Assembly (NCBI GenBank): GCA_002269645.1
Contig: NIVC01000300.1
Location: forward strand, 62,001 to 126,000
Direction: 5' to 3'
DNA length: 64,000 nt
DNA from: Macrostomum lignano
Lineage: Eukaryota
Positions 31,001 through 52,470 of the stretch are shown piece by piece. Made by a program: the position numbers and the translations under genes. How positions within the stretch are numbered: position 1 is the first letter of the stretch; each line of letters opens with the position of its first letter. The notes beneath the pieces are model-generated. The model had not been told where the DNA came from. It searched no databases and saw only the letters and a program-made list of their open reading frames with translations.

Positions 31001-31416
31001 TGGGAGAAGAAAGATGGAGCTGGAGAGGGGAGAAGGAAGATGGAGCTGGAGAGGGGAGAAGGAAGATGGAGCTGGAGAGGGGAGAAGAAAGATGGAGCTG
31101 GAGTGGGAGAAGGAAGATGAAGCTGGAGAGTGGGAGAAGGAAGATGGAGCTGGAGAGAAAAGGAGAATAAAGAGATGGAGAGTGAAAGAAGGAAGATGAA
31201 GCTGGAGAGGGAAGGACAATAGAGACTGACAGTGGGAGAAGAGGGGAAGGGACAGAGGTAGAATGGAAGCAAGAATCTCCCTAAACCCTCACCATCCCTG
31301 CTGGTTGACAGCTCAGTCAGAGACGCCACAATGTCAGACTCGGCCGAAACAGCTGATAAACTCTGTGACCAGAGCAGCAGCAGCAGCAGCCGGTGGAAGC
31401 TGGGCCGCCTTATCAT
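8076..31416 (-). CDS. Multi-exon secreted VWA/Cys-rich/TIL matrix or adhesive-like protein (13 exons, 1304 aa; may extend to 158 via two more exons, 1619 aa)
   Basis: Exons 31293-31416, 27672-27921, 23982-24406, 22898-23134, 22134-22256, 19766-19870, 19584-19688, 18963-19190, 16043-16636, 15194-15604, 9854-10750, 9168-9239 and 8076-8419 all have GT-AG ends and matching phases (mostly 1-1). Junctions rebuild family motifs such as RCRC|ECKSKC and MRC|ACPKP. Confidence 0.8.
8616..8809. repeat. 64-bp tandem repeat, 3 copies
   Basis: CTGGATATTCTGG starts at 8616, 8680 and 8744. Confidence 0.95.
9168..9239 (-). CDS. Exon 12: short linker
   Basis: ILLKAQAQGVDVDWKKFGFSKLN; TTTTGCCAG acceptor, GTGAGT donor, 72 nt. 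Confidence 0.7.
9854..10750 (-). CDS. Exon 11: CxCP repeats + VWA domain 3
   Basis: RCSCPKP...DLAFVIDSSDSV...STYTGDAL...VVLVTDGASN...IVTIGVG; 897 nt. Confidence 0.9.
11351..11567. repeat. 15-bp tandem repeat (AGAGCAGTATGTTAT)
   Basis: Seen directly. Confidence 0.95.
11590..11836 (-). pseudogene. Frameshifted Lys/Arg-rich exon-like fragment in intron 10
   Basis: CCTCAG acceptor, then ADLDKLVRSFGKAVDDLEELDAK; KAQRVKSITAERRAQKDSKKLK follows in another frame. Confidence 0.4.
12019..13590. repeat. Perfect 12-bp tandem array (GCCAAGGCGACA) x131
   Basis: 1572 bp with no variant unit seen. Confidence 0.97.
14081..14258. repeat. 42-bp tandem repeat, ~4 copies
   Basis: TTGAGCTGGTTGGCCACGGCAATGGACTTCAGTCAGTCCAAC unit. 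Confidence 0.9.
14240..14402 (-). pseudogene. Fragment paralogous to exon 13
   Basis: KAAFLSRVRNAIAHATSVH aligns without gaps to exon-13 KADFEWTMRAALSDVLRVH (7/19 identical); a TGA falls inside the 42-bp repeat. Confidence 0.5.
14470..14765 (-). pseudogene. Truncated, deleted copy of exon 11
   Basis: FKFEHKSLICNKVQR...NGKFVPIKVFEQRVNKRNGCDDILWTGSARCSRSCSKRTDVAFVIDSSD is near-identical to ~10365-10690. It lacks SVRGTN (MIDAS broken) and stops after LDVSR. Confidence 0.85.
15194..15604 (-). CDS. Exon 10: CxCP-type Cys-rich repeats
   Basis: Repeated R-C-A-C-P-x units (RCACPKP, RCACPPD); 411 nt, GTGAGT donor. Confidence 0.85.
15630..16035. repeat. (CTAA)n microsatellite filling intron 9
   Basis: Seen directly. 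Confidence 0.95.
16043..16636 (-). CDS. Exon 9: VWA domain 2
   Basis: ADVVFMLDSSLTV...RVGVIRFN...GLTFLGEAL...ILLTDG...FVTIALG; 594 nt. Confidence 0.9.
16765..17810. repeat. 30-bp minisatellite (AGTGTGGTAAAACCCACCAAAAGACTAGAA), ~34 copies
   Basis: Seen directly; variant drift toward the right end. Confidence 0.95.
18740..18880. repeat. ~21-bp tandem repeat (AAACCCACAACCAACTCATCTG-like), ~6 copies
   Basis: Seen directly. Confidence 0.85.
18963..19190 (-). CDS. Exon 8: TIL domain
   Basis: CGPRQYFRVRASGCPRTC...CPKDPAPGCVCQPYFLLHKGACVHPSECP matches the TIL pattern; 228 nt. Confidence 0.85.
19262..19583. repeat. (CACT)n microsatellite, i.e. (GTGA)n on the gene strand
   Basis: Begins at the exon 7 donor. 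Confidence 0.95.
19584..19688 (-). CDS. Exon 7: Cys-rich EGF-like unit
   Basis: DSCPKGYELRRDRKCYRTGCDPGFKRTKEGGCKK; 105 nt, GTGAGT donor. Confidence 0.75.
19766..19870 (-). CDS. Exon 6: Cys-rich EGF-like unit
   Basis: DCPPEFEYFNGRCRPVVPKLCPDGQVLFRDVCKR; T-rich acceptor, 105 nt, phase 1-1. Confidence 0.75.
19907..21225 (+). mobile_element. Full-length mariner (DD34D) transposon, 1319 bp
   Basis: 26-bp TIRs CGAGGGGTGATCAAAAAGTTC(T/A)GCAA; TA at 19905-19906 and 21226-21227. Confidence 0.95.
20090..21152 (+). pseudogene. Mariner transposase with one frameshift near 20590
   Basis: DEPRSGRP, WVPHLLT, ITGD, HHDNAAPH and HPPYSPDLAPCD motifs; 34 residues between the last two Asp; split over two ORFs. 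Confidence 0.9.
21280..22070. repeat. TCAA-based low-complexity satellite (ATCAATCT variants)
   Basis: Seen directly. Confidence 0.95.
22134..22256 (-). CDS. Exon 5: CXCXC-type Cys-rich unit
   Basis: CKSKCPGPNFAQAAEDCRCDCSMRCRPGMALNKAACECQR; 123 nt, TTTCAG acceptor and GTGAGC donor. Confidence 0.8.
22310..22760. repeat. Telomere-like (CCCAAA)n tract with CCCTAA/CCTAAA variants
   Basis: Seen directly; intronic. Confidence 0.85.
22898..23134 (-). CDS. Exon 4: Cys-rich C-x3-C-P...C-x-C repeats
   Basis: GCQRRCPRGFLLVFPCAC...CVKSCPESQILVRPCRC...CRKACPAGKKLNAARCRC; 237 nt, phase 1-1. Confidence 0.8.
23164..23875. repeat. 32-bp tandem repeat, ~22 copies
   Basis: GACTGATGGCACTGATAGCGATTTAGTCACGT unit. 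Confidence 0.95.
23890..23975. repeat. 21-bp tandem repeat, ~4 copies, next to the exon 3 donor
   Basis: GCTCATGACCAATGCTGACAC unit. Confidence 0.85.
23982..24406 (-). CDS. Exon 3: VWA domain 1, C-half
   Basis: FKSGKTATGEAF...VVVLLTDGRAN...VLAIGIG; phase 2 to 1, GTGAGC donor. Confidence 0.85.
25480..26200. repeat. GA-rich microsatellite/minisatellite
   Basis: Almost pure purine on the + strand. Confidence 0.95.
27010..27515. repeat. ~39/40-bp dimeric tandem repeat
   Basis: TACATTTATAG(G/A)AGTGAGGGG core alternating with two different tails. Confidence 0.9.
27672..27921 (-). CDS. Exon 2: VWA domain 1, N-half
   Basis: CSQKADIFFALDSSHSV (MIDAS DxSxS)...RFGVVIFSD; CAG acceptor, GTGGGT donor, phase 1 to 2. 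Confidence 0.85.
28660..31210. repeat. ~26-bp purine-rich minisatellite (GGAGCTGGAGAGGGGAGAAGGAAGAT) in intron 1
   Basis: Seen directly, ~2.5 kb. Confidence 0.95.
31293..31416 (-). CDS. Exon 1: signal peptide
   Basis: MIRRPSFHRLLLLLLWSQSLSAVSAESDIVASLTELSTSRD, then a GTGAGG donor in phase 1. The ATG choice is inferred. Confidence 0.65.
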
Positions 31417-33469: not shown

Positions 33470-34329
33470 ATAAAGCCTAAATAAATCATTTTAGCAGTAG
33501 TAGCAATGTTGGCAGATTGTAAATCTTCTAGTTACTTTTTTATCAATTTATTAAAACCACAAGCAACTATTAAAGATTTGGTGCACCTTATGGTATGAGG
33601 TTTTTGAATGAAAACAACTGGATATCATTCTTATGCTAAAATGGTCTATTTCTAAAAACTGTCCTTTGTCCAATATGTATAAGATCTGTGACCTATATTT
33701 CTGCAGGATAGTTTTGTCTTTTAATGCAAGAAATCTATACTAAATCCTGCACATAGTAGTATCCATAAGAAATGGCACAGTGTTAGTTAGAATAATAAAG
33801 TTACTTTTTCAAGTCAAATCTTTACCTAATCAATATTATGCTCTTTTATCTAGGTTATCTCATTGATATTTGAGAGGTTTCTATTGAAATAAGTGTGCTA
33901 ACCTGTACTCCTATTTAAGCTTTTCTTTTTGTATTTTTATGTGCCTAAAATAAATATCTATAATAGTAGTGTAGTTATTATTGCGATTTATACAAGTAAA
34001 ATAGTCAATTATTAGCCATGTTGAATCCGTGCACAAAACTAGGAATAATTTAGCATTTGTTTTACTATGCGAAATATTGACAATAAATATAATTTGTTAT
34101 AAATGTAGCCTCCAAGACCCTATATATACAAGCCAATTTGCTCCCAAATAAACCAACTGGTGCTTAGCTTGTTCATTTGCTGAATTCATAGTAATATTCT
34201 CAGACTTAAAACTTGAAATTCTTACCAAGTTAGTTATTTAAAAAACTAACTAAAAGTTGAAGTGCTCAGAAACTTACTAAGAGAAAGGATTAGGGAAATA
34301 TACAAAGGAATTCCAGAGAAAGAAGAGCC

Positions 34330-35175: not shown

Positions 35176-37219
35176 AGCGATTACTGTTAGGTTAGTACTA
35201 CTCTTTGCATGAATCCTAATTGCAACTTTCAACCTTCTTCACAATTCTCTTAGAAATGAACAACAATCTGAGAACTAAATTTGTTTATATTCTATCAAAC
35301 AAGTGAGCACAGGTATTATACAAGTGCATGGGTTGGTCTTCCTATCCTACCTCCAACTTTGCTCTTACTTATACAGCCTTGATTGTGTATATTTATAACA
35401 AACATAGAATAGGCCCTATTTGAGAATATTTCACAAATTAAAACAAATATATAATTTTTGCGTGTTTTTAGAAATAAAGTTCCTAGAAAGTGATAATTGC
35501 TTCTAAATTAGTATAACTTTACTTAGGAGATTAGATAAATAGTTCAAATATAAAAAGGACAACCTTCAAGTCAAAGGCACTGGAAAAATTGTAAGATTAA
35601 TATCAATGAATCCCTTTTGGCAAAAAGCTAAAACACTATGAAGGTTCTTAGAAAAGTATCTAGAGCTAGATTTTTTAAATATGCCTAGTAGAATAAGACA
35701 ATATCTTTCAAAATTAACATTTGACCTATTTTCTTATAAGACAAGGCCACTCTTTTGGCTTTGCTAATCATTGAGAAATTTGTTAAACTTGGCATAGCAA
35801 TTTATAGTGATAGATAGTCAGTATACCTTAACCTTAGCATTCTTCTACTTGACTAGGCCTCTAAAGGTAAGAGTACATATATTGTATTGGGTAGTCTATC
35901 ATAAAACTGCTCCTAGTCAAACTGAATACAGTAGAATACTGTATTGAGTACTGTAGAATTGAGTACTGAAGAGTACTGTAGAATACTGTACTCTCTGTAC
36001 TAAATACAGAGAAAATAATAAATAATTTTAAAGAAGAACAAATTGGCAATAGTTGTTAAATAAAATAGATTTAGCTCCGCTAGCTCTTTAGTCTTTTCTA
36101 ATAATCAATATCACTCGTGTCAACTTCTACAGGGAGCCTTCTCAGCCTTAAAGGCAGAAGAATACTACGGGGGTAACTACCCATATACGCGTATTTTCCC
36201 ACCATGTAGCGTCCCGTGAAGAAGTATATTTTTGACCTGCTTTATTGTGACACGGTGATCCTAGCTGCGCTGCGCCAACTGCCCGCCCGGGTAAATCTCA
36301 AACACAGAAGTAAAAAAATTGACAAAAAATAAAAGTTCAGTGGCATGGAAAATAATGCTTTACATCTAAAGATAAAAGAATAATATAATAATTTTTCTAC
36401 TTAAAACCACAAGTAACCCTGAATTTCAAGAAAGAATGCTGTTTGTTTTTTCGAAGGGTATTTTGACAACGATTAATACCGAAGACAAACAGTTTGTTTA
36501 TTTAACTCACAAAATTGTAATTTTTGTTTTGTTAGAGTTATCTTTCTACTGGTTAGTAGTATTCATTAAAATCTTTTTTGTTTTTGAGTAACATTTTGTT
36601 ATAAATTGAAACTGTTTATAGTTACTAAATTTAACGTGCTATGAATCTGCCTGATTTATAAAATAAACGGAATACACGGTACTTAAACCATTTTTAATAT
36701 ATATCGAAAACACATACCGTTGACGGACTGATAACGGACGGAATTTATTATTGATGGCAAAGAAACGATTTCAACTGGGTTATTTATCTTTACTGAAATT
36801 TAATATGGCGATCGAAACCTGCAAATTGAAATTGCTAGAACTTGAAAATTCTTATAAATTTTCCTTTTGAACTTTTGATTAAGGTTCCCATCACCGATCA
36901 AATATATTGTCTGTAGAATTATTGTATATTCCCGATTTAATTTCTACTTTTAAATACGCAAGCAAAAACAGACCGAAACAGATACTTGAACTGCACTGGA
37001 CTTAGGAAGTGCAGACCATAAAAAATCAATGAAAAGCGTACAGCTACTGGCACTGGGAAAATGTAAAACAGTAAAAAACGAGCCAAAATGATGCTGGCAA
37101 AAAAAGAAAAAACAGAAAAACTTGCAGATTGGAAAATACTATGCAAAGCAGATATGGCACTGAAAACTATAGGAAAAATGGAAATGGCAAAGCAATACTA
37201 AAGCAAAACTGGGAACTAA

Positions 37220-37255
<36 letters not shown>

Positions 37256-37387
37256 TTGTCCTGTCCCTTTTCGCGGCTCCTGTACGTGCCTCCCATCAGT
37301 AGTATAAAGTAAAGTAACCACTTGACTACTCTATCCCCGTGGGAAAACCCAGAACCTTAAGTATCGACAGCTGGGTACAAAAAATTA

Positions 37388-37960
37388 CAAGGGGCGTCTC
37401 AAAAGTTCGTGCAATCGATCCATTTCTACCACAGACATCGCTCTAGTCGCTGCAGCTGTTACCACAGCTGTCCTGCGACCAGCAGCAGTCGTTTCCTGCG
37501 CACTTGAGCTATCTAGCTCGTATTTGCACCTTTCTCCTTTCTTAGCTCGCATTATTATAACCCCACCGCGATTGTCATCACCATTGCTTTCCCTCTTCGG
37601 CCGACGTCGCGGTTATGGGAGATGAACCGCAGGAAGAGCAGCGGTGGTAAATTAAATCTGAATGGCTGCGAGGAATGCCAGCTACACAAGTCACCTACAG
37701 CTTGTAGACGCGTACAGCAAGGATGAACTTTGCCAGCGCGATGTGTACAAGAGGTATGATCGCTTCAAGAGATGGCTGCACTTCGACTCTGAATGAGCCA
37801 AGATCTGGGAGACCCCGGAAAGTGCGGACCGAGAGCAGCATCAAACTCATCCGTGGTCTGCTGGAAATCGATCCGCGATGGACATGCAAAGAAATGGCGG
37901 AACTCAGTAAAGTTCCTTCATCCACCATCCACCAAACTCTCAAATGCATAGAGGACCTGT
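37388..37960 (+). mobile_element. Truncated second mariner-family element (left TIR + HTH remnant)
   Basis: TA|CAAGGGGCGTCTCAAAAGTT; NEPRSGRPRKVRTESSIKLIRGLLEIDPRWTCKEMAEL...STIHQTL. Confidence 0.7.
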
Positions 37961-40774
37961 AATGAACTTAACATACTCGTACAACGAATTACGCTGCTCC
38001 TTCGGATCTAGCATTAGATATGCTTCTTAATTAAAAAGGCTTTCTAAGGGGTCATTAAATACAATTAATTAATAAATTTTTCTGTGGATTACTGAGCGTT
38101 AGAGCTCAAGATATACTCATAAGATCAAAAGTGAATATCATTAGAAGTGAATCATCACAGATTTTCACACAAACATATACATAAACAAAACTGCTTACTT
38201 AAGTATGCTACTTGGCTATAAATGGTTAAAACCCAATATAATGAACTTAATAAGGTCTATACTTCTTTAGTAAAATCACAAGAACATGCAATGAAAAACT
38301 ACTCTTTGTTTAGTATTTTTCTACATAATTAGAAGATTTAGGAACATTTACATGCTTATGAGCTGAGTAAACTTACACCTTACAGGAAATTTTGTGCTTA
38401 TGAAAAAAGTCTAAATGTAACATCAATAGGCATAAGTAAGTAACAGTGCATTGACAGTCGCAGATAAAATGGAATAACAATATTTAAAATGTATCTGAAA
38501 GAATGAATCACTGAAGATCATAATGGTTGGCATTGTTTATCAGAAAACTTACACCTTACAGGAATTTTTTAACAGTAGACAAATATCATGCAATCGAGAC
38601 AGGGCCAAATAAGTTCATAAATATTGAAAACACAGCGGTAAAACATCCACAAGCTCACAGATGAAGGTTTTCCCCAATATTTTCAGTCATTTTCCCATAG
38701 ACAAATATATTACACGTGCACAAAAAACATTATGAAACAAAAAACGTACTTAAGATACAAGTCAGAAAAATACGTTTTTGGTCGCTATCGCCACAAAAAA
38801 ACATAAACTCTGACTAAAAGTTTAAAAAAATATTTTTTAATCAGTTTTTTATGAACGAAAGTTAAATTCATGTACAATTGCTTCTAATTTAACAATGAAA
38901 TTCCTGATGTAAGAAAAAATTTGTTTATAACTTACGTACATTTCAATCTGAGATTTACCCGCCCGCATATAGCGCGTGCACGATCATATTCTTAAATTAA
39001 AGCTAATTTAAAATCCCGCCTAAACTGACACGTTGTTAAAATGCTCGATCGAGCTACTTCAACATGTAGCTCATGCTGACGGACTATAAAAACAGTGCTG
39101 ACAAATTTCTAGTAGCATATCATCATACCAAAAAACAGCATATCAACTGCAAGCAAGCTTGAACTAATGATTAATACAGAGAAGATCAATGCATGTCGTC
39201 TACTTACACCGGCCGATATTCGGGGTGCAAAATTGATTTACGAGTCGTTCTCTGGTGCCTTACTCTACTTTCTTGCTCTCTATAATGTAGGTCTAGCGGT
39301 CTAAGGTTCTTACAGCTACTTCTTCTATCAGGCAGTCAGAGAACACCGTCTAAACTCACGGGATCTCTAGTATGTGGGCTGTCTCTTAATTAAGACAAAA
39401 AGTAGCTTGAAGACTAAGTGTTGCATTCTTGAATTAATTAAGAATGAGATTGATTGTCCAAGGCTCCTAACTGAGCCAAAATCAAAAACAAGTATCGCCC
39501 TCTGGCGCGCACCAGGTCTATTTATAGACTTATCAAAAATGGGGTGGCACAAAGAAAAGTCCACCGTCACACTAAGATTTGCGCCAACTGGATAATCCTG
39601 AGACCAATAAAAACAAGCGGGTTTCTAGATAAAGCATCGCAAAGTGCCACTCCAGTTTGAGGCGTCTGTTCGTTTGTTTTAGCAATGGCGGGGGTTAAGC
39701 AATATAAAAACCTGGACTCAGTCCCCTAGTTGTAAACTAAATTTAGTTAGTTCTACGAGCTAGTTATACGAGCTAGGGTTTCTAAGTGTTTGGGTTACAT
39801 TTAGAGATTATTCAGGGTTTTGAAAATCTTACATGTACATATGTGTTGCGTTGGACAAATTTTGGGATACATGTAGAATCAGATATTACAGAAAAAGCTT
39901 AGTTTTTCCTCTCTTAACTCTGTACATGGTTGATTACAGTCCGCTCTCTGATTACAGTTGTCAAGCTTCTTGGGGGTTGATTTCACATTCTTGAGCAGCT
40001 CCACCGGGATGGTTGAATAGGAGTCCGTGGGCGGGTCTGATTCTCCCCCTGTTTTCGCCAGATCTGCCGCGTGCCGCATGCCGACAAGGACCACTAGTAG
40101 TTACCGTTGTATCAACGGTACAACGATACAACGTGGTAACTTCTAGTGGTCCTTGCATGCCGATCGTTCTTTTCAACTTCGTTGCTGTCTACATGTAAGT
40201 CGGGCCTCTCCTCGGTTTGCTTCTCCCGGCCGGTTTGAGCACCCCGTGTGCCTGCCGCGGGGTGTTTTTTGCTATACGAGCATAATACTCACTAGAATTT
40301 AAAAAAAGCTTCATTAGATTTGCGCATTCACATTTGACTTGACAGTTGATTAATTATCTTAGTTTGGGACCCTGGGACAATAAAATAATAGCCGGGACGT
40401 AGTTAGTATAATACTGTACATCTAAATTCGTGTACATATATCTTACTAACGGCTTGTTGACGCCCTCATGTTTACAATTCCGTTGCAATCGCTACTTATA
40501 ATTTGTTACAATAAGTAGCTAGTACTGAGAAAAAGTACACATTTTCCAAAGCAAAGACGGGTGCAACTGCTTGTTCTTGTATTGTGCATACATTTACATG
40601 TGCTGTACAGTGTGGGTACATACATCACATGTCAAAAAGGAAACTTGACCTCAATTTAAACCTCCATTGACTAAGTAAGCCACTCTAATTGTCAGTCCGA
40701 TAAGCCGGAATGACATTGAGATTCGAAACTGCACAAAAGCTTAGTTACATGCATTGTAGATCGGCGGAGACCAG

Positions 40775-41025
<251 letters not shown>

Positions 41026-41300
41026 CTCGACTTTATAGATACTTGATCTGAAAAAACACGTTCACACATCGAAAGCCGTCATAAAGAACGACGAAATTTT
41101 CTTTTCGAGTATTTGAAAGCTGTACGCCATGCAAGTTTTATTGAACAGTAAGAGATGAAAGAAAATATCTACGATTATGGTTGAAAAGATTCAAATTTAC
41201 ATTAAATACACGCACAATAAAACAGGATCTTTTGAACATTGTACAATGTACCTACATGTAGCGACATCCAGATTACACAGATCACCTGCTGAACTCCTGT

Positions 41301-41987
41301 TCATTCGCAGCCGCGGTAGGGCTTCAGCCTCGTGTATGGCAAACATCTGTCGGAGCAGCACTCATTGTCGAATATGCAAAACTCCTTTGACTTCAGCTTC
41401 TTGCACTTGGGCACGCTGCTGCCGGCGTCTCTTCGACCAGTGCATCCTGAAGTGCTACCTGCAGGATAAAGAGTTCGGCTTGCACTACGATGTTCTGGCT
41501 GTCACTCCGATAATCACTCTGGCTGTCATTCTGATTGTCATTCTGGCTATCACTCTGGTTGTCACTCCGGCTATCAATCTGATTGTCACTCCGGCTAATC
41601 ACTCTGATTGTCAATCTGGCTATCAGTCTGATTGTCACTCCGGCTATCAGTCTGGTTGTCACTCCGGCTATCAGTCTGATTGTCACTCCGGCTATCACTC
41701 TGATTGTCAATCTGGCTATCAGTCTGGTTGTCACTCCGGCTATCAGTCTGATTGTCACTCCGGCTATCAGTCTGATTGTCACTCCGGCTATCAGTCTGAT
41801 TGTCACTCCGGCTATCACTGATTGTCACTCCGGCTATCACTCTTATTTTCTTGACCTCAAGTGTACAGCAATTAACTGAAAGATTAGTGTTCATAGAAAT
41901 CTTTAACTATTCCCACCTTAAGCCACCAGACTTACCAAGAAATGAAAGCACCAAGATTACCGCTACTAACAAGAAATCTGATTTCAT
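41301..41987 (-). CDS. Two-exon secreted inhibitor-cystine-knot-like peptide precursor (69 aa)
   Basis: Exon 1 41936-41987 (MKSDFLLVAVILVLSFL, G|GTAAGT). Exon 2 41301-41458 (CCTGCAG acceptor): GSTSGCTGRRDAGSSVPKCKKLKSKEFCIFDNECCSDRCLPYTRLKPYRGCE*. AATAAA at 41137-41142. Confidence 0.8.
41495..41845. repeat. 24-bp tandem repeat in the knottin intron
   Basis: CCGGCTATCAGTCTGATTGTCACT unit. Confidence 0.95.
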
Positions 41988-42624
41988 CTCGATCGAAGGA
42001 TGAAGGATGAAATATTCAGTAATTATGCGAAGTTCGACGTCTTTAGGGAATCAAGCCTTGTGTCAATAATCAATATTTACAAACTCGCGCCCCGGTTCGC
42101 TCGTCTTAACCCATAAAAGTCAAGTTTTACGATTCCAAACGTTTCAGTTCGCCTTGTTGCCTTTGACCGGCTGAGTGAGGCCATAGACAAGGACAAATGC
42201 TCTATCAACTCCAAGCGGTTCTGCAGCGCTAGGGTTGAAAGTGACTCGTCTGGTTGCCCGGAGAAACCGCGAGCTGTTCCCGAGTTCGCAGGCCTCATCA
42301 TTCACAGACGAATGGGTTTCACCGGAGGTGGAGCAGCCGATATTTGTTAAAGCCAGGCATTGGCAGCCAGAATGCTGCTCATTTAACTGTCTAGGCCACA
42401 AAAATGGCTAATTTAGCTTCGGGTGTTTTTCACGGAGTAAAAGGTGCCTCGTGTAGCCCGTGAGGCTCATGGTGGAAAGCCCGGATGTCTTCTGCTGAGA
42501 TACAACAGCACATTCCCGAGTCGCTTGGGATGGGAGGCAGTTCGTTGTATCCATCCGCCTCCTTTTATAGAGAGCGTCAGTCCAGGGAACCAGGGATCAA
42601 TTTAGAACCAGAAGGTAGACACGT

Positions 42625-43037
42625 CTCGAGTAAGTACAGTAAGCTCGAGTAAGTACAGTAAGCTCGAGTAAGTACAGTAAGCTCGAGTAAGTTCAGTAAG
42701 CTCGAGTAAGTAAGCTCGAGTAAGTACAGTAAGCTCGAGTAAGTACAGTAAGCTCGAGTAAGTTCAGTAAGCTCGAGTAAGTACAGTAAGCTCGAGTAAG
42801 TACAGTAAGCTCGAGTAAGTACAGTAAGCTCGAGTAAGTACAGTAAGCTCGAGTAAGTACAGTAAGCTCGAGTAAGTACAGTAAGCTCGAGTAAGTACAG
42901 TAAGCTCGAGTAAGTACAGTAAACTCGAGTAAGTACAGTAAGCTCGAGTAAGTACAGTAAGCTCGAGTAAGTACAGTAAGCTCGAGTAAGTACAGTAAGC
43001 TCGAGTAAGTACAGTAAACTCGAGTAAGTACAGTAAA
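42625..43037. repeat. 19-bp tandem repeat (CTCGAGTAAGTACAGTAAG), ~21 copies
   Basis: Seen directly. Confidence 0.95.
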
Positions 43038-43580: not shown

Positions 43581-45958
43581 GTAAGTTCGCGCGAGCTGAA
43601 GAAAGTTGCTCCTTTTTTAGCTTTAGTCCTTTAGTCCTTTTAGTAGCTCCTTTGAAATTTTATTCTCGTATCGTATTTTTCCGAGAGGCCGCTTTGAGCA
43701 ATGGCATCGCTGTTGAAGATGAGGCGGTGACAGACAAAATGCTGGCCATTCTCGTCCCTATTGCAAAGAGGCTGCTGTAGTGAGTGAAACGAGGCTAGAC
43801 TGCTTGTTGTAGTCGATAGTTGCCGAAAGCTTGCAGGCGAGAATAATAGCGATCAGTATATTTATTGAATTATTGAGCTGAGTCAGAATGGTGGTTAAAG
43901 TCGCACCATGCACATTTGATATTGTACGCATAAGGGTTGAGCTAGCAGAGCCACGCGGCGCAGCCGCTAACAACCCCCCAACACACACGATAGTAGGCGC
44001 TGCCTACACTTCTCCCCCCCAAGGAATTAAAAAAACTTCGAACTAAAGAAAATTGACTGTTTACGAAGTACACCGCTTCAGCTTGAGTTATGCCGCTTCA
44101 GGAAATGCGGATCAGTTACTTAACTCGTATAACACTTCGGCGTGTCGCGGGCTGCTCTTGGATGCCGTCTCTGAGCCACAGACTCTGCTTCTTCACTAGC
44201 GGCCTGGCCGGCGGACTGGCCGGCGGACTGACCAGCTGACTGGCCGTCGGACTGGCTGGCGGACTGGCCGGCTGACTGGCCGGCTGACTGGCCGGCTGAC
44301 TGGCCGGCTGACTGGCCGGCTGACTGGCCGGCGGACTGGCCGGCGGACTGGCCGGCTAACTGGCCGGTGGACTGGCCGGCGGACTGGCCGGCTGACTGGC
44401 CGGTGGACTGGCCGGTGGACTGGCCCGCCGGTTCCATCAGAGGCCGCAGCTGGGTCACGTGCCGCATACAATACTGCTGGCCTCGCCGTAGGACGCAGGT
44501 GTCGCCTCGAACCTCCTGCACCGTCCATGGCTGAGTTTCGAATGGCAGCTGCGTTTTTTGCGTGCCTGCTGCTTGCGAAGAACACTCATGCCGGGAACGA
44601 TGCGGTGCTTCTTTGCGGCCGAGCGCCTGTCGAACGCACTCTTCATCTTTCACGGCTTCCTGGCTGACGTCAGATGACTTCGGCTGCCTGCTGGCTGGGA
44701 TTCCGTCGTTGATCGGCCTGCCCATGAAGAGCTCGGCCGGAGTCCGCCCAGTTGCTCGGTGAGGCGTTGTGCGGAACGCCAGAAGCCAGTCGTCCAGGGC
44801 CTCTCTCCAGTTCCGACCTTCAGCGACAGCAGTCTTCACGACCTTCCCGATGCTGCGGTTGACACGCTCGGTGGCTCCGTTGGACTCCGGATGCAGCGGA
44901 CAGATGAGCCGATGATGAACTCCGTATCCGCTGAGGAAGCTGCGAAAGTCGGCAGAGTTAAAGGGCGGTCCGTTGTCCGTGATGACCTCAGCAGGGATGC
45001 CGTGCCGACCGAACAGCCGTCTCAGATGCGGTGTCACGTTGCCGGCCGTCGTTGACTGCATGATGTCGACTTCCGGGTACTTGGAGCACAGGTCCGTGGT
45101 GACCAGCAGCATCTGACCTTGCACCGGGCCGTAGAAGTCCATGCCGAGCAGTTGCCAAGGTCCGCCCGGCATCTCCGTCGGCTTCAAAGGCGTCTGGTGC
45201 ACGTGCGTGGCCGCTGCTTGGCAACCGACACAGCACTTGACGAATACTTCGCAGTCGCTGCGCATCTTTGGCCACCAGACTTTGGTCTGCAGTCACTTCA
45301 GGGTTCTGTCCGCACCGAGATGTCCCGTATGGGCCAGCTGCAGTATCGGTCTCCGCAGCGACTCGGGGACAACGATGAGATCTCCGCGGAGCAGAATTCC
45401 GTCGCTCTCGGAAAGTTCGCTGCTGCTGGACTTGAGTGAGCGTTGCACCGGATCGAGCATGTTTCAGCTGCCGGTTTTGATCGCGCTGAGTGCAGCCTGG
45501 ATCTCCGTGTCAGTCCTTGAAGAGTCTCAGATCTGCTGAAGGCTGAATTCCTTTGGCACGGCACCTGCTGACACATCTGGCGTAGGCCACGGGTCTGCTG
45601 CTGCCGTCTGGCTGCTTCTGGGTGAGGATGGCGCCGAGACCGATGGAAGATGCGTCCACCAGAAGCTCCGTCTGCCGCTTGCGGTCGAAGAACGCCAGCG
45701 TGTCGGCTCCGGCGATGGCCTTCTTGATTGTGCTGAACGCCTCAGTGTGGCTGGCAGTCCATTCCCATGGCTGGCCCTTCTTGGTCAAATGGCGCAGCGG
45801 GGCTGACACGTCGGCGAATCTTGGGATGAATTTCGCCAGAAAGTTCGCGGTGCCGAGAAACGACCGAACTTCTGAGACATTGGCGGGCTGCCGGAAGTCT
45901 TGCATTGCGCGGATTTTCTCAGCAGCTGGTTGGATGCCTTTGGCTGACAGGTGCATCC

Positions 45959-48427
45959 TGTTGGGTATTGGGCTCAGTACCCTTATAACCTTATATCTAT
46001 GGTAGAAATATATGCGTGGGCTACAGCGCGGCACAGCCCTCTGGGCAAAGTTTAGGTTTGCGCGATATTGAGCCGCTCGGCTTCGTACACAACATGGCAT
46101 CGCAAGCAGCCAAGTGAAAAGCCCAAAAGTGCAAGATGGCACCCAAGATCGACGTCCGAAGTGCGCCGCACTTCGACATCGAGTCACAGAAGGAGCTATA
46201 CCCACATTGGAAGCTACTGTGGGAGGCCTTCGAGGAGCTCTCAGGACTCAACAGTCTGGACAACGAGGACGAGAAAAAGAAGTACCGTCTTTTCGCGCTA
46301 CGCCAATGCCTGAGCATGGAGACACTGCGCGTCGTGGACAGCTTGCCGCATCTGACCGAGGAGAACAAGAACGACGCCGGAGAGATCATCAAGGCCCTGG
46401 AGCTGTTCATCACGGGCCAGCGAAATGAAATATTCGAGCGCCGCGAGTTTTCGTTACGGAATCAGATGGAGGGCGAATCGTTCAGCGACTGGTACGTGGC
46501 AATAAAGGAAATGACATCGCGATGCAACTTTGAGCGCTGCTGTGGTATATGTGCGGAGTGCCAGATCAGAGACAGAATCGTCATGGGGCTTCGAGATCAC
46601 AGCACAGTGGAGAAGTTGCTGGAAGAAGGCAGCGAGCTGACACTAGAAAGAGCCAAGACGATTTGTGAGTCAATGGAAAGCTCCAAGAAGAATTGTGCCG
46701 CGATGAAGGGCGAGACGTCGACAATCTCTGCAGTTCGAAGAGTTTCGAGCTACAAGAAGGCCAAGCAAACTGCCGCCGCAGATGCCCGCCAGGCAGGTGG
46801 ACCCGCTCAACGAAGTCAGATAGTGGCGAAGCACCCAATCTGCAAATTCTGCGGATGTGAGCACGAACCCGGAAAGGAGAAATGTCCAGCCTGGGGGAAA
46901 TCGTGCACCAAGTGCGGTAAGGCTAACCATTTTGCTAAGCAATGCAGGAATGGAAAGCCACACAAGACAAGCGATAATATGAATTCGATTTTTGCTGCAA
47001 CGAAGACGGAGAATAGCGAAATCGCATCAAGCTGTGTGCGTTTGAGCGTCGACGGTCTTCTGCGTTTGGTGGTCAACACGCAGAAGACCGTCGTGCTATG
47101 CGTGCCGGACGACACCGAGGCTGCAATCTTCTGCCGAGGCGCTAACGGACAGGCGAGTGAGCTTCCAAGATGTCAGCAGTTCGTCTACCTCGGCGGTCTG
47201 GTTCCCGACGTCCGCGAGGATCTGCGGCGTCGCCGAGGACTTGCCTGGGCTGCCTTTCGTTCTATAAGGTCAGTCCTGCAGTCCGAGGCCCTACCGGACC
47301 GCCAGAGGGCGGCGCTGTTCCAGGCGGTGATCGAGACCGTCCTGTTATACAACGCCGAGACCTGGACGCTGACAGACTCGCTCGAGGCTCAAGTTGACGC
47401 GGCGCACGCTGGCCTGCTGCGCGCCGCCTTCAAGATCGGCAACGAGCGAGTCACCAACACGGCGCTCTATCATCGCGCCGGCCTGGCCCGTCCTAGCGAT
47501 CTGCTGCGCCGTCGGCGACTCCAGCTGGCAGGCCACGTCATCCGCGCCGAGGCCTACTGTCCGGAGCCGGTGCAGGAGGTGCTGCTACTTACGTTGCAGG
47601 CACCCTACCGGCGGGGACAGGCGAGGACTCGGCGCTACGTCGACTGTCTGCTGGCTGACGCCGGCGCCCCGGACTCTGCCGGCGGTGCGGCCTTTGTTCG
47701 CGCCCAAGCTTCGAAGCGAGCCATCTGACGCTGCTTTTGCGAACTGACAGCGTACTCTGTTGTTGTTGTTGTTGTTTGAGCGTCAAAACTGACGATGGAG
47801 TGAGGGTCATTCCCGCACTGCCAGACACGGGTGCGTTTATCAACGCGATCCCAGTAAAAATGTTGCGAACAATCGGCATCGAAGAAAGAAGTCTGTGCAA
47901 GTCCGACATTCGACCAAGCAGCCCATTAACTACCAAGACTGAAAATGCGAGACAGAGTTGCAGTGCAAGACGTCCAGACCAAGAAGTGGGATCGATACGG
48001 TGTGATCGTCGAAGCGATGAAAAACAATGACTTCCTGGTCAAACTGGCAAGCGGTAGAGTGCTGAGAAGAAATCGGAGATTGCTCAGAAGAAGACTACCG
48101 GTCCTGGCAGCTGAAGCACGACATCGTGATGCGACATCGTTGCACGCAAGACGGAATAGCAAGCCCAGAGAACCCGAGCCGCAAACGAGGTGGCCCATAC
48201 GAAACCGCCGACAACCTGTTCGGCTTCAGGTCAACCCCCAAATGAAGTCCTATGACTGAAGGACCCATTGTGTTTTGAATCAAAAGGGGAGATGTTGGGT
48301 ATTGGGCTCAGTACCTTTATAACCTTATCTTAACCTAGAAATATACGCGTGGGCTAAAGCGCGGCACAGCCCTCTGGGCAAAGTTTAGGTTTGCGCGATA
48401 TTGAGCCGCTCGGCTTCGTACACAACA
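45959..48427 (+). mobile_element. Nested non-autonomous LTR element (Mag-like gag, truncated protease, integrase C-tail)
   Basis: 135/136-bp TG..CA LTRs at 45959-46094 and 48293-48427; CATCC TSD; PBS TGGCATCGCAAGCAG; PPT AAAAGGGGAGA. Removing it rejoins host RT as EFLGM|HLSAKGI. Confidence 0.92.
47051..47774 (+). mobile_element. 5'-truncated RTE-like LINE fragment
   Basis: VNTQKT...FVYLG...VLLYNAETWTL...LQLAGHVIR; (TTG)n tail; 10-bp TSD TTTGAGCGTC at 47041-47050 and 47775-47784. Confidence 0.9.
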
Positions 48428-49968
48428 CATCCCGAGAAATTCAACAGCCGGTTTGGCGAACTTGCACTTGACCTTGTTCAGCGTGATGCCGAATTCGCGG
48501 AGGCGGTGAAGGCAGGCGTCCAGTCTGTCGTGGTGCTGCTTGGCATCCGCGGCGTAGACGATGACGTCGTCGTGGACCCACCTGACACCGTCGATGCCGC
48601 TGAGGATGCCCAGCATGACCCGCTGAAGGATCTCCGAAGCGTTGGTGAAGCCCATACTCAGCCTCTTGAGTCGCATCAGTCGAGCGGCGTGCTAAACGTG
48701 AAGAGATGGCGGCTGTCCTCGTGCACCGGAATCTGGTAGAAGGCTTTCCGGATGTCCAGCTCACTGAACAGCTTGGCTCCGGACATCTCCTCGGTGACCT
48801 CGTCCAGGGTCGGAATCTGCTGCTTTTCGGGGACCACAAAGGCGTTCAGGTCGCGAAGGTCTTGGCAGATCCTAACGCCGCCATCGGTCTTGGGCACCAC
48901 GACCATGCGTGCCACCCAGGTGCTGGGACCCTTGACTGACTCGATGATGTCCTGCCGCTCCAGTGCCTTCAGCTCATCCACCACGGCTGCTCTCAGGTGC
49001 GCCGCCACCCGGGATGGCGCGTGGCAGACTGGCACGGCGTTGTCTGACAGCTGCACTCTGACCTGTACACCTTTGATGCATCCGATGCCTTCGAAGACTG
49101 TTTTGTGCCGGTGTAGAATGTCCTGAAGCTGTGGCGACGGACGCGCCGAGTCGCTGTTCGAATTCACGGCTTCCGTCGCATTGAACTCCGGGCGCTGAAT
49201 TTTGAGAACTCCGAGCCTGAATGTGGGATCGCGACCGAGTATTGTGAGACCATCGCCATCCATGATGTGGAAGGGCACGACGGTGCTGACTGCTCCGACG
49301 CGAACTTCCAGGTCGGCGATTCCGAAGATGTTGAGTGGTGCAGAGCAGCCATAGGCTCTGACTTCTGATTCTGGAGTTCGCAGGTGAGGCCGATTGAGCG
49401 TCTTGAAAGTGCGGCTGCTCATAATGCTGCAGCTGGCACCGCTGTCGATCATCATCGAGAGCTGCCGACTTCCCACTTGGACTTTCAGCGAGACCTCAGC
49501 CGGGTAGGTGCCGTTTCTGTGCAGGGTGAACACGTCTTCGCTGGCGACGGCGTCAGGGACCGTGCAGTCTGCGTTGGCGTGAATCTGCTGCCGGGCTCTG
49601 CTGCTGGCTGAGCACGGTTGACGGCACGCCTTGGCCAGGTGATTTGGCTTACCGCAGTTATTGCAGATCCTGCCTTTGGCTGCGTCGCAGGTGGCGTGGC
49701 CACGCTCGCCGCATCGGTAGCAGATGTTCATCTGGCTCGGCTTTGATCTCGGTTCGCTGGCGGGTCCGCGTCTGTCTGTCGCTGTTTTGCTGCTCCTGGC
49801 CAGGTTAGCTACCTGGGCGTCGGTGGTCTTCTCCATCTCAGCAGCCTGCTCTTCCGCAGCCTCGAATGCTCTGGCCTTCCGCAGGGCATCCTCCAGCGTG
49901 ATGTCTGCTTCTTGGAGCAGCCGTCTGCGCAGTTTGTCGGAGGTGCATGTCGCGACGAGCTGGTCCCG

Positions 49969-50028
49969 GATGGAATGGAAATCCAATGGGGTTTCCCCGC
50001 GCAGGTTCGTATCCTGCTTGCGACGCCA
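49969..50028 (+). other. ~60-nt copy of tRNA-Ser 3' two-thirds including CCA, as an extended primer-binding site
   Basis: GATGGA-ATGGAAA-TCCAA, long variable arm TGGGGTTTCCCCGC, T-arm GCAGG-TTCGTAT-CCTGC, TTGCGAC-G-CCA; 1 nt from the LTR. Confidence 0.85.
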
Positions 50029-50284
50029 CTGTAGTGAGTGAAACGAGGCTAGACTGCTTGTTGTAGTCGATAGTTGCCGAAAGCTTGAAGGCGAGAATAA
50101 TAGCGATTAGTATATTTATTGAATTATTGAGCTGAGTCAGAATGGTGGCTAAAGTCGCACCATGCACATTTGATGTTGTACGCATAGCGACTTACATGCG
50201 TGTGTTGCCAATAGAAACGGCCGGGTGGATCCCTAGGTTGCGCCCAAGCATGAGCCTCTCCCTCCGTTTGCTCTACAGTCACAC

Positions 50285-50632
50285 CATGGTGTCCGTTCTA
50301 ACAGCAAACAGCACAGCTCCTCCTTCGAAACCTCCTTGAAAGGAGTGCTTCACTCCCACATACTATAAATTAAGGAATGCTCTACCTGCAGCATTAGCTA
50401 ATCATGGCATCAAGTCATCTATTTTCAAATGTCAAGTTCTCAAAGACCACATTGATCAATATTTTGACTTTTATTTTCTTTGTCTTGCTCTCCTTCCATC
50501 GTCTAACTTTGTATTCTTTCACTACTTTTCACTATAACCCTTCGTAGCCATGGGGCACGATTGATTTTATTGGTCTTTGACCACTCCGAAGTGAGTTTGA
50601 TGTGATAATAATAATAATATTAATAATAATAA
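50285..50632 (+). mobile_element. Probable 3' end of a CR1/L2-type LINE
   Basis: FTPTYYKLRNALP...IFK resembles the F.P....WN.LP RT tail; followed by (TAA)n. Confidence 0.4.
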
Positions 50633-51127
50633 TAGGAGGTGACCCTTGAGACTGACTGCTCGGAGAGCACTCGTGGCTCACGAGAAGGACATTGTGATGG
50701 CCGGATTCCCTCTCCTACTAGATTCAGCAAGGCATTCTGGAATCCTGTCTACGAAAAACATACAAATTCGCAAGAGGGTTGGGGGGACACTGACGAAACA
50801 TCTTCAGCGATACCGTGCCGCAACCATAGTGAGGCAATTCTGCCCATCCCACTGACCTCTGAGCACATACAAGCGCATCAATTCTGACACAGGCTGTACA
50901 GCGGCCCTGACTTGACTTTCTAATCGTCAGGCATGTGCACTCTCTGTGCCATGTTGGGTTGACCCTCACGGGTGGTGAATCGCACGACAACCCATCGAGC
51001 TACAGGCCCCAAATGAATCAAACTGGGATTTGTTGCGCGAGATTCAGACACATTTAGTGAATTTATTCTGCGCTGCACGTATTGAGGAGGCCCATTACGC
51101 AGGCCATGTATTCTGTTCCTGCTGCAG

Positions 51128-51508
51128 ATCGCACCAAGCTGCAGCTGCACAAGCGGGGGGCATCGACGGCAACAAAAACCCGGACAGGTTTGCTGGGTCA
51201 TGCTCGCACACTCTAATAAACTACGAAAACGAGTGGTGGGAGGCCGCTCTTGCAGCACCATCGTTCGTGTCGTTCATTACCATCTACAACAGGCAGGACT
51301 GCTGCGCCGAGAGGCTCAACTTATTCGACATCCTGGTGGACGGGTCCGTGTGCAACCAAGTGAGATTCAGCGTGCCGTTCACCGTGGCCAACTTCACCTG
51401 CAACGCCATCGGCTCGGCTCGCGCGTCAGAATTTTCCAACGCATTACTGGCGGCGATCGATATCTTACGATTTGCGAATTCGAGGCGTTCGGTTTTCATG
51501 CCATGTGA
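51128..51508 (+). pseudogene. F-type lectin (fucolectin) domain exon, frameshifted
   Basis: IDGN...SCSHT...WW...IYNRQDCCAERL in one frame and GSRVRI...LTICEFEAFG in another; a GGCTC duplication sits at the shift (~51412-51421). Confidence 0.85.
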
Positions 51509-52470
51509 TGCTTGCTGATGCCATGTGATGCTGCTGATGCCATGTGATGCTTGCTGATGCCATGTGATGCTTGCTGATGCTATGTGATGCTGCTGATTCC
51601 ATGTGATGCTTGCTGATGCCATGTGATGCTGCTGATGCCATGTGATGCCGATGATGCCATGTGATGCTTGCTGATGCCACCATGTGATGCCGCCGATGCC
51701 ATGTGATGCTTGCTGATGCTATGTGATGCCGCTGATGCCATGTGATGCTTGCTGATGCCATGTGATGCTGCTGATGCCATGTGATGCTGCTGATGCCATG
51801 TGATGCTTGCTGATGCCATGTGATCCTGCTGATGCCATGTGATGCCTGCTGATGCCATGTGATGCTTGCTGATGCTATGTGATGCTTTCTGATGCCATCA
51901 TGTGATGCCGCTGATGCCATGTGATGCCGATGATGCCATGTGATGCTTGCTGATGCCACCCCATGTGATGCTTGCTGATGCTATGTGATGCCGCTGATGC
52001 CATGTGATGCTTGCTGATGCCATGTGATGCTGCTGATGCCATGTGATGCTGCTGATGCCATGTGATGCCTGCTGATGCCATGTGATGCTTGCTGATGCTA
52101 TGTGATGCTGCTGATGCCATCATGTGATGCCGCTGATGCCATGTGATGCTTGCTGATGCCATGTGATGCTGCTGATGCCATGTGATGCTGCTGATGCCAT
52201 CATGTGATGCCGCTGATGCCATGTGATGCTTGCTGATGCCATGTGATGCTGCTGATGCCATGTGATGCTGCTGATGCCATGTGATGCCTGCTGATGCCAT
52301 GTGATGCTTGCTGATGCTATGTGATGCTTTCTGATGCCATCATGTGATGTCGCTGATGCCATGTGATGCTTGCTGATGCCATGTGATGCCGCTGATGCCA
52401 TGTGATGCCGCTGATGCCATGTGATGCTTGCTGATGCCATGTGATGCTGCTGATGCCATGTGATGCTTGC
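51499..52470. repeat. 19/20-bp satellite (GCCATGTGATGCT(T)GCTGAT)
   Basis: Starts at the lectin stop codon. Confidence 0.95.

What the first reader, a model, noticed from the sequence alone, without database searches (positions are those of the whole stretch)
41137..41987. Hidden two-exon gene for a conotoxin/spider-toxin-like cystine-knot peptide
Seen: a hydrophobic signal exon (MKSDFLLVAVILVLSFL) ends in G|GTAAGT and joins in phase 1, across a satellite-filled intron, to GSTSGCTGRR-DAGSSVPKCKKLKSKEFCIFDNECCSDRCLPYTRLKPYRGCE*, with AATAAA ~160 nt downstream. The mature region has C-x8-C-x5-CC-x3-C-x11-C. Established: signal + dibasic site + C-C-CC-C-C is the architecture of ICK toxins and antimicrobials. 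Inference: a ~42-aa, slightly basic secreted defence, prey-capture or seminal peptide. ORF-based annotation would miss it.
Basis: partly seen in the sequence, partly recalled or inferred. Interest (0 to 1): 0.85.

Follow-up and report, generated by a model that had tools for sequence, protein, structure and literature searches.

The report
Flatworm knottin-like secreted peptide gene
This is a real two-exon gene of the flatworm Macrostomum lignano for a small secreted peptide with six conserved cysteines that resembles insect knottins; GenBank already lists it as a hypothetical protein, and its fold and function remain untested.

Summary
On the minus strand there is a signal exon (41987..41936), a GT-AG phase-1 intron (41935..41459) holding a 24-bp x14 minisatellite, a Cys-rich exon (41458..41301) and AATAAA at 41142..41137.

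The spliced 69-aa product is 100% identical over its full length to GenBank PAA85982.1, 'hypothetical protein BOX15_Mlig026414g1' of Macrostomum lignano. That annotation was built from RNA-seq transcript assemblies. So the gene is real and transcript-supported, and it is not hidden.

It has no Pfam domain and no detectable orthologue or paralogue among 1.84 billion representative proteins. Its only meaningful relatives are dipteran knottins:
- The solved ICK venom peptide U-Asilidin1-Dg12 (PDB 6PX7), E=0.025.
- A six-repeat Anopheles protein matching Pfam Conotoxin and UPF0506, whose cluster includes a member named 'phenoloxidase inhibitor-like'.

The similarity goes beyond the cysteine framework: 1 of 2000 Cys-fixed shuffles scored as high.

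Knot connectivity could not be tested. AlphaFold2 confidence was low (pLDDT 61-66) and Foldseek found nothing. A seventh cysteine sits between the signal peptide and the RR site, so the proposed processing is uncertain.

M. lignano, as I recall it, is a diatom grazer without a venom apparatus, so a prey-capture toxin is unlikely.

Verdict: an ordinary, uncharacterised, lineage-restricted knottin-like secreted peptide of modest interest.

The parts
41936..41987 (-). Exon 1 coding part. ATG (41987-41985) through MKSDFLLVAVILVLSFL plus the first base of Gly18. It encodes the n-region and hydrophobic core of a signal peptide.
   Evidence: Read directly. In-frame stop 66 nt upstream and no earlier ATG. 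Identical to the annotated CDS start of BOX15_Mlig026414g1.
41459..41935 (-). Phase-1 intron of 477 nt. Donor G|GTAAGT, acceptor pyrimidine tract + CAG|GT.
   Evidence: The junction reproduces the annotated 69-aa protein exactly. The annotated gene span of 687 bp equals ATG to stop.
41514..41847 (.). Intronic minisatellite: 24-bp unit x14, 90% matches.
   Evidence: Tandem Repeats Finder. It is one of many such arrays in the window. It has the same length in the sister copy L001.
41301..41458 (-). Exon 2 coding part including the TGA stop (41303-41301). It encodes the signal c-region GSTSG, then C23-TG-RR, then the 42-aa Cys-rich domain DAGSSVPKC...RGCE.
   Evidence: tblastn 100%. Framework C-x8-C-x5-CC-x3-C-x11-C.
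41307..41405 (-). Knottin-like core, CysI to CysVI: CKKLKSKEFCIFDNECCSDRCLPYTRLKPYRGC.
   Evidence: Only such motif in the six frames of the window. Aligns to Dg12/6PX7 and to the Anopheles repeats.
41137..41300 (-). 3' UTR up to and including the AATAAA poly(A) signal (41142..41137).
   Evidence: Read directly. The poly(A) site itself is inferred, not shown.
42072..42079 (-). TAAATATT, a possible TATA-like element about 90 nt upstream of the ATG. Inference only.
   Evidence: Read directly. Not tested.

Best explanation
The locus is a genuine, transcribed two-exon gene of the free-living flatworm Macrostomum lignano. It is a copy of Mlig026414.g1 / PAA85982.1 and encodes a 69-aa secretory precursor.

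Shown:
- The gene model, which is identical to a transcript-derived GenBank protein.
- Exon 1 carries the hydrophobic core of a signal peptide, and a phase-1 intron separates it from the Cys-rich exon.
- The C-terminal 33 residues carry the C-C-CC-C-C framework and the motif E-x-C-x3-(N/D)-E-C-C-S-x2-C-L. They share this motif with dipteran knottins, namely Asilidin-1 Dg12 (solved ICK structure 6PX7) and the Anopheles Conotoxin/UPF0506 repeats.

Inferred:
- The precursor enters the ER, and signal peptidase cuts around S21-G22|C23.
- The domain folds oxidatively into a three-disulfide inhibitor-cystine-knot (I-IV, II-V, III-VI), with the 11-residue last loop forming the beta-hairpin.
- Either a prohormone-convertase-type cut after R26-R27 releases a 42-aa peptide (pI 8.6, net +3), or the N-terminal Cys23 is kept and stays free or makes an intermolecular disulfide.
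- The stable mini-protein acts outside the cell by binding a protein target or a microbial surface.

Given the animal's biology and the non-venom dipteran relatives, I favour an endogenous or defensive role (antimicrobial or mucosal defence, or an enzyme or receptor inhibitor) over a prey-capture toxin. The gene is lineage-restricted, with no detectable orthologue or paralogue in public proteomes.
For: - Exact coordinates and reading frames.
- 100% identity and 100% coverage to NCBI 'hypothetical protein BOX15_Mlig026414g1 [Macrostomum lignano]', accession PAA85982.1 / UniProt A0A267GL20.
- The gene lies on NIVC01000299.1 with a span of 687 bp, equal to ATG to stop.
- The GenBank annotation of that assembly was built from StringTie/TACO RNA-seq assemblies plus a de novo transcriptome and TransDecoder (PMC5730564).
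- The sister copy differs by 5 non-coding SNPs in 1.29 kb.
- PDB phmmer: the only hit below E=1 is 6px7_A (E=0.025). Its sequence is that of U-Asilidin1-Dg12, an ICK-classified assassin-fly venom peptide (PMC6266666).
- Exhaustive HMMER scan of 1.84e9 proteins: the only non-low-complexity hit is P0005 (E=9.3e-4). P0005 is an Anopheles protein with six C-x6-C-x5-CC-x3-C-x6-C repeats matching Pfam Conotoxin PF02950 (4.9e-18) and UPF0506 PF11703 (8.3e-8).
- A profile of those repeats plus Dg12, built without the flatworm peptide, scores it 21.0 bits. Cys-fixed shuffles score 1.2 +/- 4.9, and 1 of 2000 reach the real score.
- A profile of the six Anopheles repeats plus the flatworm peptide itself (alignment A2) retrieves only ICK peptides from the PDB: Dg12, a Scytodes spider toxin, nemertides, omega-atracotoxin and imperatoxin.
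- Knottin-fold UPF0506 proteins are known as secreted or parenchymal products in parasitic flatworms.
Against: - No Pfam family matches the peptide even at E<=10.
- The E=9.3e-4 hit sums five near-identical repeats, so a single-domain match would not be significant database-wide.
- AlphaFold2 gives only pLDDT 60.7 (single sequence) and 66.3 (7-sequence alignment). The C-terminal loop, where the ICK hairpin should be, is unstructured. Foldseek finds nothing in the PDB or BFVD.
- Loop 1 has 8 residues, one more than the classical ICK consensus as I recall it.
- Seven cysteines follow the signal core, so the disulfide pattern is not determined.
- No expression site, orthologue or selection signal could be obtained. 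The function is therefore inference only.
Confidence: 0.6

Rival explanations
1. It is a real secreted cysteine-rich peptide but not an inhibitor cystine knot. The seven cysteines (C23 plus six) would give another disulfide pattern, for example a covalent dimer through the odd Cys or a non-knotted three-disulfide fold. The resemblance to knottins would then be convergent and limited to the CC-S-x2-C-L core.
For: - A seventh Cys lies between the predicted signal cleavage site and RR.
- No Pfam knottin family matches.
- The AlphaFold2 models are low-confidence. They place strands at residues 10-12, 15-17, 22-25 and 28-31 of the domain, not in the last loop.
- Loops 1 and 5 are longer than in all aligned relatives.
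Against: - From general knowledge, the C-C-CC-C-C framework is overwhelmingly associated with the knottin fold.
- All sequence hits of any weight are ICK peptides.
- The similarity exceeds Cys-fixed shuffles.
Confidence: 0.2
2. It is a seminal-fluid (prostate-gland) peptide transferred at mating. It would be one of the rapidly evolving, lineage-restricted secreted reproductive proteins known in M. lignano.
For: - It is small, secreted and an orphan with no orthologue in public proteomes.
- Rapid evolution of reproduction-related genes and many putative seminal fluid proteins are documented in Macrostomum (titles and abstracts of PMC7336406 and PMC5977470).
Against: The identifier Mlig026414 is absent from the 17 supplementary files held for PMC7336406, the Macrostomum RNA-Seq study of reproduction-related genes. 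It is also absent from the neoblast and germline re-analysis. This is weak evidence, because stored files may be truncated.
Confidence: 0.1
3. It is a venom-like neurotoxin used for prey capture or defence against predators, as in cone snails, spiders and nemerteans.
For: - Framework VI/VII and similarity to the assassin-fly venom knottin Dg12.
- A profile that includes it also touches nemertides, atracotoxin and imperatoxin.
Against: - From my own knowledge, M. lignano is a small interstitial worm cultured on diatoms, with no venom apparatus.
- The authors who described Dg12 state that its closest homologues are non-venom dipteran proteins (PMC6266666).
- The gene is single-copy and not part of a toxin gene family.
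- There is no long propeptide.
Confidence: 0.04
4. It is transcriptional noise: a lowly expressed spliced transcript from a repeat-rich region whose short ORF resembles a knottin by chance and makes no functional peptide.
For: - The locus sits among minisatellites and retrotransposon remnants.
- There is no orthologue, and the only available second copy (L001) is too close to show purifying selection.
- The motif alone is expected about 0.1 times per window by chance.
Against: - A signal-peptide exon, consensus splice sites in the right phase, a six-Cys domain, a poly(A) signal and residue-level similarity to knottins beyond the cysteines (p about 0.001) all coincide.
- The model passed the filters of the 'coregenes' set, which excludes transcripts overlapping repeats.
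Confidence: 0.05

Closest known systems
U-Asilidin1-Dg12 (PDB 6PX7), an inhibitor-cystine-knot venom peptide of the assassin fly Dolopus genitalis, and the wider dipteran Asilidin-1-like knottin family
   Same: - Six-Cys C-C-CC-C-C framework.
- Shared residues KCKK...E-x-C-x4-ECCS-x-RCL-x-Y.
- It is the only solved structure hit (E=0.025).
- Small, basic and secreted.
   Different: - Loop 1 has 8 residues against 6, and the last loop 11 against 6.
- The flatworm peptide has an extra upstream Cys.
- Identity outside the cysteines is low, and homology is not established.
- The flatworm has no venom gland (my own knowledge of the species).
Anopheles multi-knottin secreted proteins (P0005, UniProt A0A2M4CIE0; one cluster member is named 'phenoloxidase inhibitor-like protein'), matching Pfam Conotoxin PF02950 and UPF0506 PF11703
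   Same: - Best non-self hit in 1.84 billion proteins.
- All six Cys plus Ser after CC align, with 33-41% identity over the aligned domain.
- It is a non-venom, endogenous secreted protein.
   Different: - The mosquito protein is a 397-aa polyprotein of six repeats, whereas the flatworm gene encodes a single domain.
- The E-value depends on summing repeats.
- The flatworm peptide itself matches neither Pfam family.
UPF0506 knottin-fold proteins of parasitic flatworms (Schistosoma, Opisthorchis, Schistocephalus)
   Same: - Flatworm small secreted Cys-rich proteins described as knottin-fold, with undefined function (PMC8400842).
- One is a parenchyma marker in S. mansoni.
- The Pfam model overlaps the same CC-S-x2-C motif in the Anopheles repeats.
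   Different: - The peptide gives no hmmscan match to PF11703, even at E<=10.
- No UPF0506 flatworm protein appeared in the exhaustive HMMER scan.
- Any relation is therefore undetectable by sequence.
O-superfamily conotoxins and spider ICK toxins (signal-pro-mature precursors, framework VI/VII)
   Same: - The same cysteine framework.
- A signal peptide.
- A dibasic site upstream of the Cys-rich domain.
   Different: - There is no real propeptide, only about 4-5 residues that include a Cys.
- The gene is single, not a family.
- No Pfam Conotoxin match.
- The organism is not venomous (my own knowledge of the species).

Membership tests
Inhibitor cystine knot (knottin) peptides | Six cysteines in the framework C-C-CC-C-C, with loop lengths in the knottin range. 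| tested here: met
   C-x8-C-x5-CC-x3-C-x11-C. All six Cys align with the Anopheles repeats. Loop 1 (8 residues) is one longer than the classical consensus CX3-7C as I recall it.
Inhibitor cystine knot (knottin) peptides | Disulfide connectivity I-IV, II-V, III-VI, with the third bond threading the ring. | tested here: inconclusive
   AlphaFold2 models have pLDDT 60.7 and 66.3, and no coordinates are available to measure Cys-Cys distances. Foldseek gave no PDB or BFVD match.
Inhibitor cystine knot (knottin) peptides | Beta-hairpin between CysV and CysVI. | tested here: inconclusive
   The model puts strands at residues 22-25 and 28-31 and leaves 32-41 as coil at pLDDT about 58. Confidence is too low to count for or against.
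Inhibitor cystine knot (knottin) peptides | Detectable sequence similarity to a peptide with a solved ICK structure. | tested here: met
   6px7_A (U-Asilidin1-Dg12) at E=0.025, the only hit below E=1. A knottin profile scores the peptide 21.0 bits against 1.2 +/- 4.9 for Cys-fixed shuffles. The match is weak, so it is not proof of homology.
Pfam knottin/toxin families (Conotoxin PF02950, UPF0506 PF11703, Conotoxin_I2 PF17557 and others) | Score above the family's gathering threshold in hmmscan. | tested here: not met
   Zero families at E<=10 for both the precursor and the 42-aa domain.
Venom ICK toxin precursors (cone snail or spider type) | Signal peptide, then a propeptide ending in a basic cleavage site, then the mature toxin. 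| tested here: inconclusive
   The signal-like N-terminus and RR are present. The pro-region would be only about 4-5 residues and contains Cys23. No SignalP or proteomic data were available.
Venom ICK toxin precursors (cone snail or spider type) | Membership of an expanded paralogue family expressed in a venom or secretory gland. | tested here: not met
   No paralogue in the window or among annotated proteins. The expression site is unknown.
M. lignano seminal fluid proteins | Prostate-gland-limited expression. | not testable with these tools
   The identifier was not found in the supplementary files held as text. No files are held for PMC10786194, PMC12801592 or PMC11398382.

The most novel reading that the evidence does not exclude
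This orphan knottin could be the first characterised ICK-type effector of a free-living, early-branching flatworm. Two readings of that kind are not excluded. One is a mating-transferred peptide that manipulates the partner, given that the species is a model for sexual conflict. The other is an endogenous inhibitor of a phenoloxidase or tyrosinase-type enzyme, suggested by the 'phenoloxidase inhibitor-like' name given to a fragment in the cluster of the closest Anopheles relative. Either would link the uncharacterised UPF0506 knottins of parasitic flatworms to a testable function in a species that supports transgenesis.
Probability: 0.12. Interest if true: 0.55.

Novelty: new member of a known kind. 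Interest (0 to 1): 0.3.

Why it matters
If confirmed, it adds a single-domain knottin-like peptide to the secretome of a genetically tractable free-living flatworm.

Knottin-fold proteins (UPF0506) are known as secreted products of parasitic flatworms, but their function is undefined. M. lignano supports transgenesis (PMC5730564) and, as I recall, RNAi as well, which could give a way to study such peptides.

None of this is surprising to a specialist. The gene model already exists in GenBank, and the framework is a common one.

Tried and rejected
- Word-indexed homologue search with the precursor returned only the protein itself. A second search with an alignment of the peptide plus Anopheles repeats did the same, and did not even recover the Anopheles proteins. 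It added nothing.
- The exhaustive HMMER scan gave three further hits (P0002-P0004). These are Lys/Asp/Thr-rich or leucine-rich-repeat low-complexity proteins without the Cys framework. I rejected them as spurious.
- AlphaFold2 without and with a small alignment gave low confidence. Three Foldseek searches (PDB twice, BFVD once) gave no usable match. The structure test is therefore uninformative, not negative.
- tblastn and a regex scan of the window for paralogues found none.
- I looked for 'Mlig026414' in PMC and bioRxiv full text and in the supplements of seven M. lignano papers. It was not found, and three of the papers have no supplementary files held.
- A search for papers combining Macrostomum with knottin found none. 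'Inhibitor cystine knot' plus flatworm found four papers holding both terms, two of which were listed, and neither of those concerns flatworm knottins.
- I considered whether the window is contig NIVC01000299.1. It is not. It is 98-99% identical with several indels, so it is a second copy, haplotype or assembly.
- I considered the long + strand ORF 41177..41821 and the minus-strand ORFs through the minisatellite. They are repeat-translation artefacts.

Full report
**1. What is in the sequence**

All features lie on the minus strand.

- Start: an ATG at 41987-41985 follows an in-frame TGA 66 nt upstream, with no other ATG between them.
- Exon 1: it encodes MKSDFLLVAVILVLSFL and the first base of a Gly codon. 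It ends at 41936 in front of a perfect donor, G|GTAAGT.
- Read-through: without splicing, the frame stops after 26 codons.
- Intron: 41935..41459, 477 nt. It contains a 24-bp x14 minisatellite (41514..41847). It ends in a pyrimidine tract and CAG.
- Exon 2: 41458..41301 completes the Gly codon in phase 1. It reads STSGCTGRRDAGSSVPKCKKLKSKEFCIFDNECCSDRCLPYTRLKPYRGCE, then the stop.
- Exon 2 is not a free-standing ORF. Its frame is closed by a stop only 14 codons into the intron, with no start codon. A plain ORF finder would indeed miss the gene.
- Poly(A) signal: AATAAA at 41142..41137, 159 nt after the stop.
- Cysteine spacing after the RR: C-x8-C-x5-CC-x3-C-x11-C. The 42-aa domain has pI 8.6 and net charge +3.

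**2. Is it a real gene, and whose?**

The spliced 69-aa product is 100% identical over 100% of its length to 'hypothetical protein BOX15_Mlig026414g1 [Macrostomum lignano]'. The accessions are PAA85982.1 and UniProt A0A267GL20. The organism is therefore the free-living marine flatworm M. lignano.

That protein is encoded on contig NIVC01000299.1 of assembly GCA_002269645.1. The gene span there is 687 bp, which is exactly ATG to stop here.

The paper describing that assembly explains how the GenBank annotation was made. It is the 'coregenes' subset of a genome-guided transcriptome: StringTie and TACO on RNA-seq, merged with a de novo transcriptome. ORFs were called with TransDecoder, and transcripts overlapping repeats were removed (PMC5730564).

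The window is not that contig. It is 98-99% identical, with several kilobase-scale indels. Within the gene (42288..41000) there are five SNPs, all non-coding, and the minisatellite has the same length. The window is thus a second copy of the locus, whether haplotype, recent duplicate or another assembly.

The gene is 'hidden' only in the sense that a plain ORF finder would miss it.

**3. Chance**

The strict framework motif occurs once in the six-frame translation of the 64-kb window. About 0.1 occurrences are expected in block-shuffled sequence. Alone it would be weak evidence.

The case rests on several things coinciding:
- A signal-like exon.
- Consensus splice sites in the right phase.
- A poly(A) signal.
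- The transcript-based annotation.
- Residue-level similarity to knottins (section 4).

**4. What kind of protein**

Pfam gives no match at E<=10, for the precursor or for the 42-aa domain.

An exhaustive HMMER scan of 1.84 billion representative proteins finds the protein itself and four others. Three are low-complexity repeat proteins without the cysteine pattern, and I reject them as spurious.

The fourth is P0005 (E=9.3e-4, five matched stretches). It is a 397-aa secreted protein of Anopheles darlingi.
- It has six repeats of C-x6-C-x5-CC-x3-C-x6-C.
- It matches Pfam Conotoxin (4.9e-18), UPF0506 (8.3e-8) and Conotoxin_I2.
- One member of its cluster is named 'phenoloxidase inhibitor-like protein'.

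Against the PDB, the domain's only hit below E=1 is 6px7_A (E=0.025). Its sequence is that of U-Asilidin1-Dg12. This is a 34-residue peptide from the venom of the assassin fly Dolopus genitalis, classified as ICK. Its authors note that its nearest relatives are non-venom dipteran proteins (PMC6266666).

When aligned, all six cysteines and the Ser after CC are invariant. Identity to the mosquito repeats is 33-41%.

To separate framework from sequence, I built a profile from the six mosquito repeats plus Dg12, leaving the flatworm peptide out.
- The flatworm peptide scores 21.0 bits.
- 2000 shuffles that keep the cysteines fixed score 1.2 +/- 4.9 bits.
- One shuffle reaches the real score.

The shared core is E-x-C-x3-(N/D)-E-C-C-S-x2-C-L.

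A profile that includes the peptide retrieves only ICK peptides from the PDB: Dg12, a Scytodes toxin, nemertides, omega-atracotoxin and imperatoxin. That profile is dominated by the mosquito repeats.

The peptide is therefore knottin-like in framework and in sequence. The evidence falls short of proving homology, because the database-wide E-value depends on summing near-identical repeats.

**5. Fold**

- AlphaFold2 gave mean pLDDT 60.7 on the single sequence and 66.3 with the seven-row alignment.
- Coordinates are not exposed, so Cys-Cys distances could not be measured.
- Foldseek found nothing in the PDB or BFVD, which is usual for 40-residue queries.

The result is uninformative, not negative.

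**6. Processing**

The N-terminus has the layout of a signal peptide: a short n-region (MKSD), a 13-residue hydrophobic core and a small polar c-region (GSTSG). By the -3/-1 rule, cleavage would fall after S21 or G22. This is inspection only, since no predictor was available.

The canonical toxin layout of signal, propeptide and mature peptide is met only loosely.

Two outcomes are possible:
- RR is cut, releasing a six-Cys 42-mer.
- Cys23 stays on the peptide, either free or as an intermolecular bridge.

**7. Function**

No expression or functional data could be found.
- The identifier is absent from PMC and bioRxiv full text.
- It is absent from the supplementary files held for four M. lignano papers. 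Three more papers have no files held.
- There is no paralogue in the window.
- There is no other relative in annotated proteomes.

From my own knowledge, M. lignano grazes diatoms and has no venom apparatus.

The closest relatives are endogenous dipteran knottins. In parasitic flatworms, knottin-fold UPF0506 proteins occur as secreted products (Schistocephalus, PMC8400842). They also occur as a parenchyma marker (S. mansoni). Their function is undefined.

My best reading is a secreted, disulfide-stabilised mini-protein that acts extracellularly by binding a target. I favour defence, or regulation of an enzyme or receptor. A seminal-fluid role is a live alternative.

**8. Novelty and verdict**

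- The gene model is already in GenBank as a hypothetical protein.
- Its knottin-like nature is not recorded there: it has no Pfam domain and no informative name.
- No paper in the library links Macrostomum with knottins.
- It is a new, unclassified member of a very well known kind of peptide.
- It sits in a repeat-rich, retrotransposon-flanked region.
- Interest is modest, at about 0.3.

Noticed in passing
window 45623-64000: A giant, almost perfect palindrome. Blocks 45623-48330/61293-64000, 48681-50845/58778-60942 and 53325-53737/55565-55977 are 100% complementary, with the axis near 54650. The arms carry Gypsy-like RT/integrase ORFs and 19-bp satellite arrays. It could be a real inverted duplication or a long-read assembly artefact.
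   Followed up: no
window 44120-46205 (-): Retrotransposon pol remnants: an integrase-like 381-aa ORF and an RT/RNase H-like 231-aa ORF, about 2 kb upstream of the peptide gene. The integrase ORF runs into a 12-bp x19 array (44199-44425) that translates as (GQSA)n.
   Followed up: no
whole window, e.g. 12019-13590, 28727-31211, 1982-2961, 16780-17813: An extraordinary density of mini- and microsatellites. There are 37 TRF rows with score >=200. They include a perfect 12-bp x131 array (100% matches) and a 26-bp x97 purine-rich array, which cause the strong GC/AT skews seen.
   Followed up: no
window vs L001 (NIVC01000299.1:234274-254960): The window is a second copy of the annotated locus. It is 98-99% identical, with kilobase-scale indels (for example, window ~36290-38957 has no counterpart at the L001 13030-13037 junction). 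The peptide CDS is identical. This fits the known redundancy of the M. lignano DV1 assembly.
   Followed up: partly
window ~33575-33883 (-) and from ~32730 downward (-): Downstream neighbours, by transfer from L001: a 102-aa LSM-domain gene and a 1621-aa protein with multiple VWA domains and a weak TIL hit. The window coordinates are approximate because of the indels.
   Followed up: no
window 40777-41026 and 42625-43036: The peptide gene is bracketed by repeats. (ACAG)x62 begins about 110 nt past the poly(A) signal. A 19-bp x22 array lies about 640 nt upstream of the ATG.
   Followed up: no
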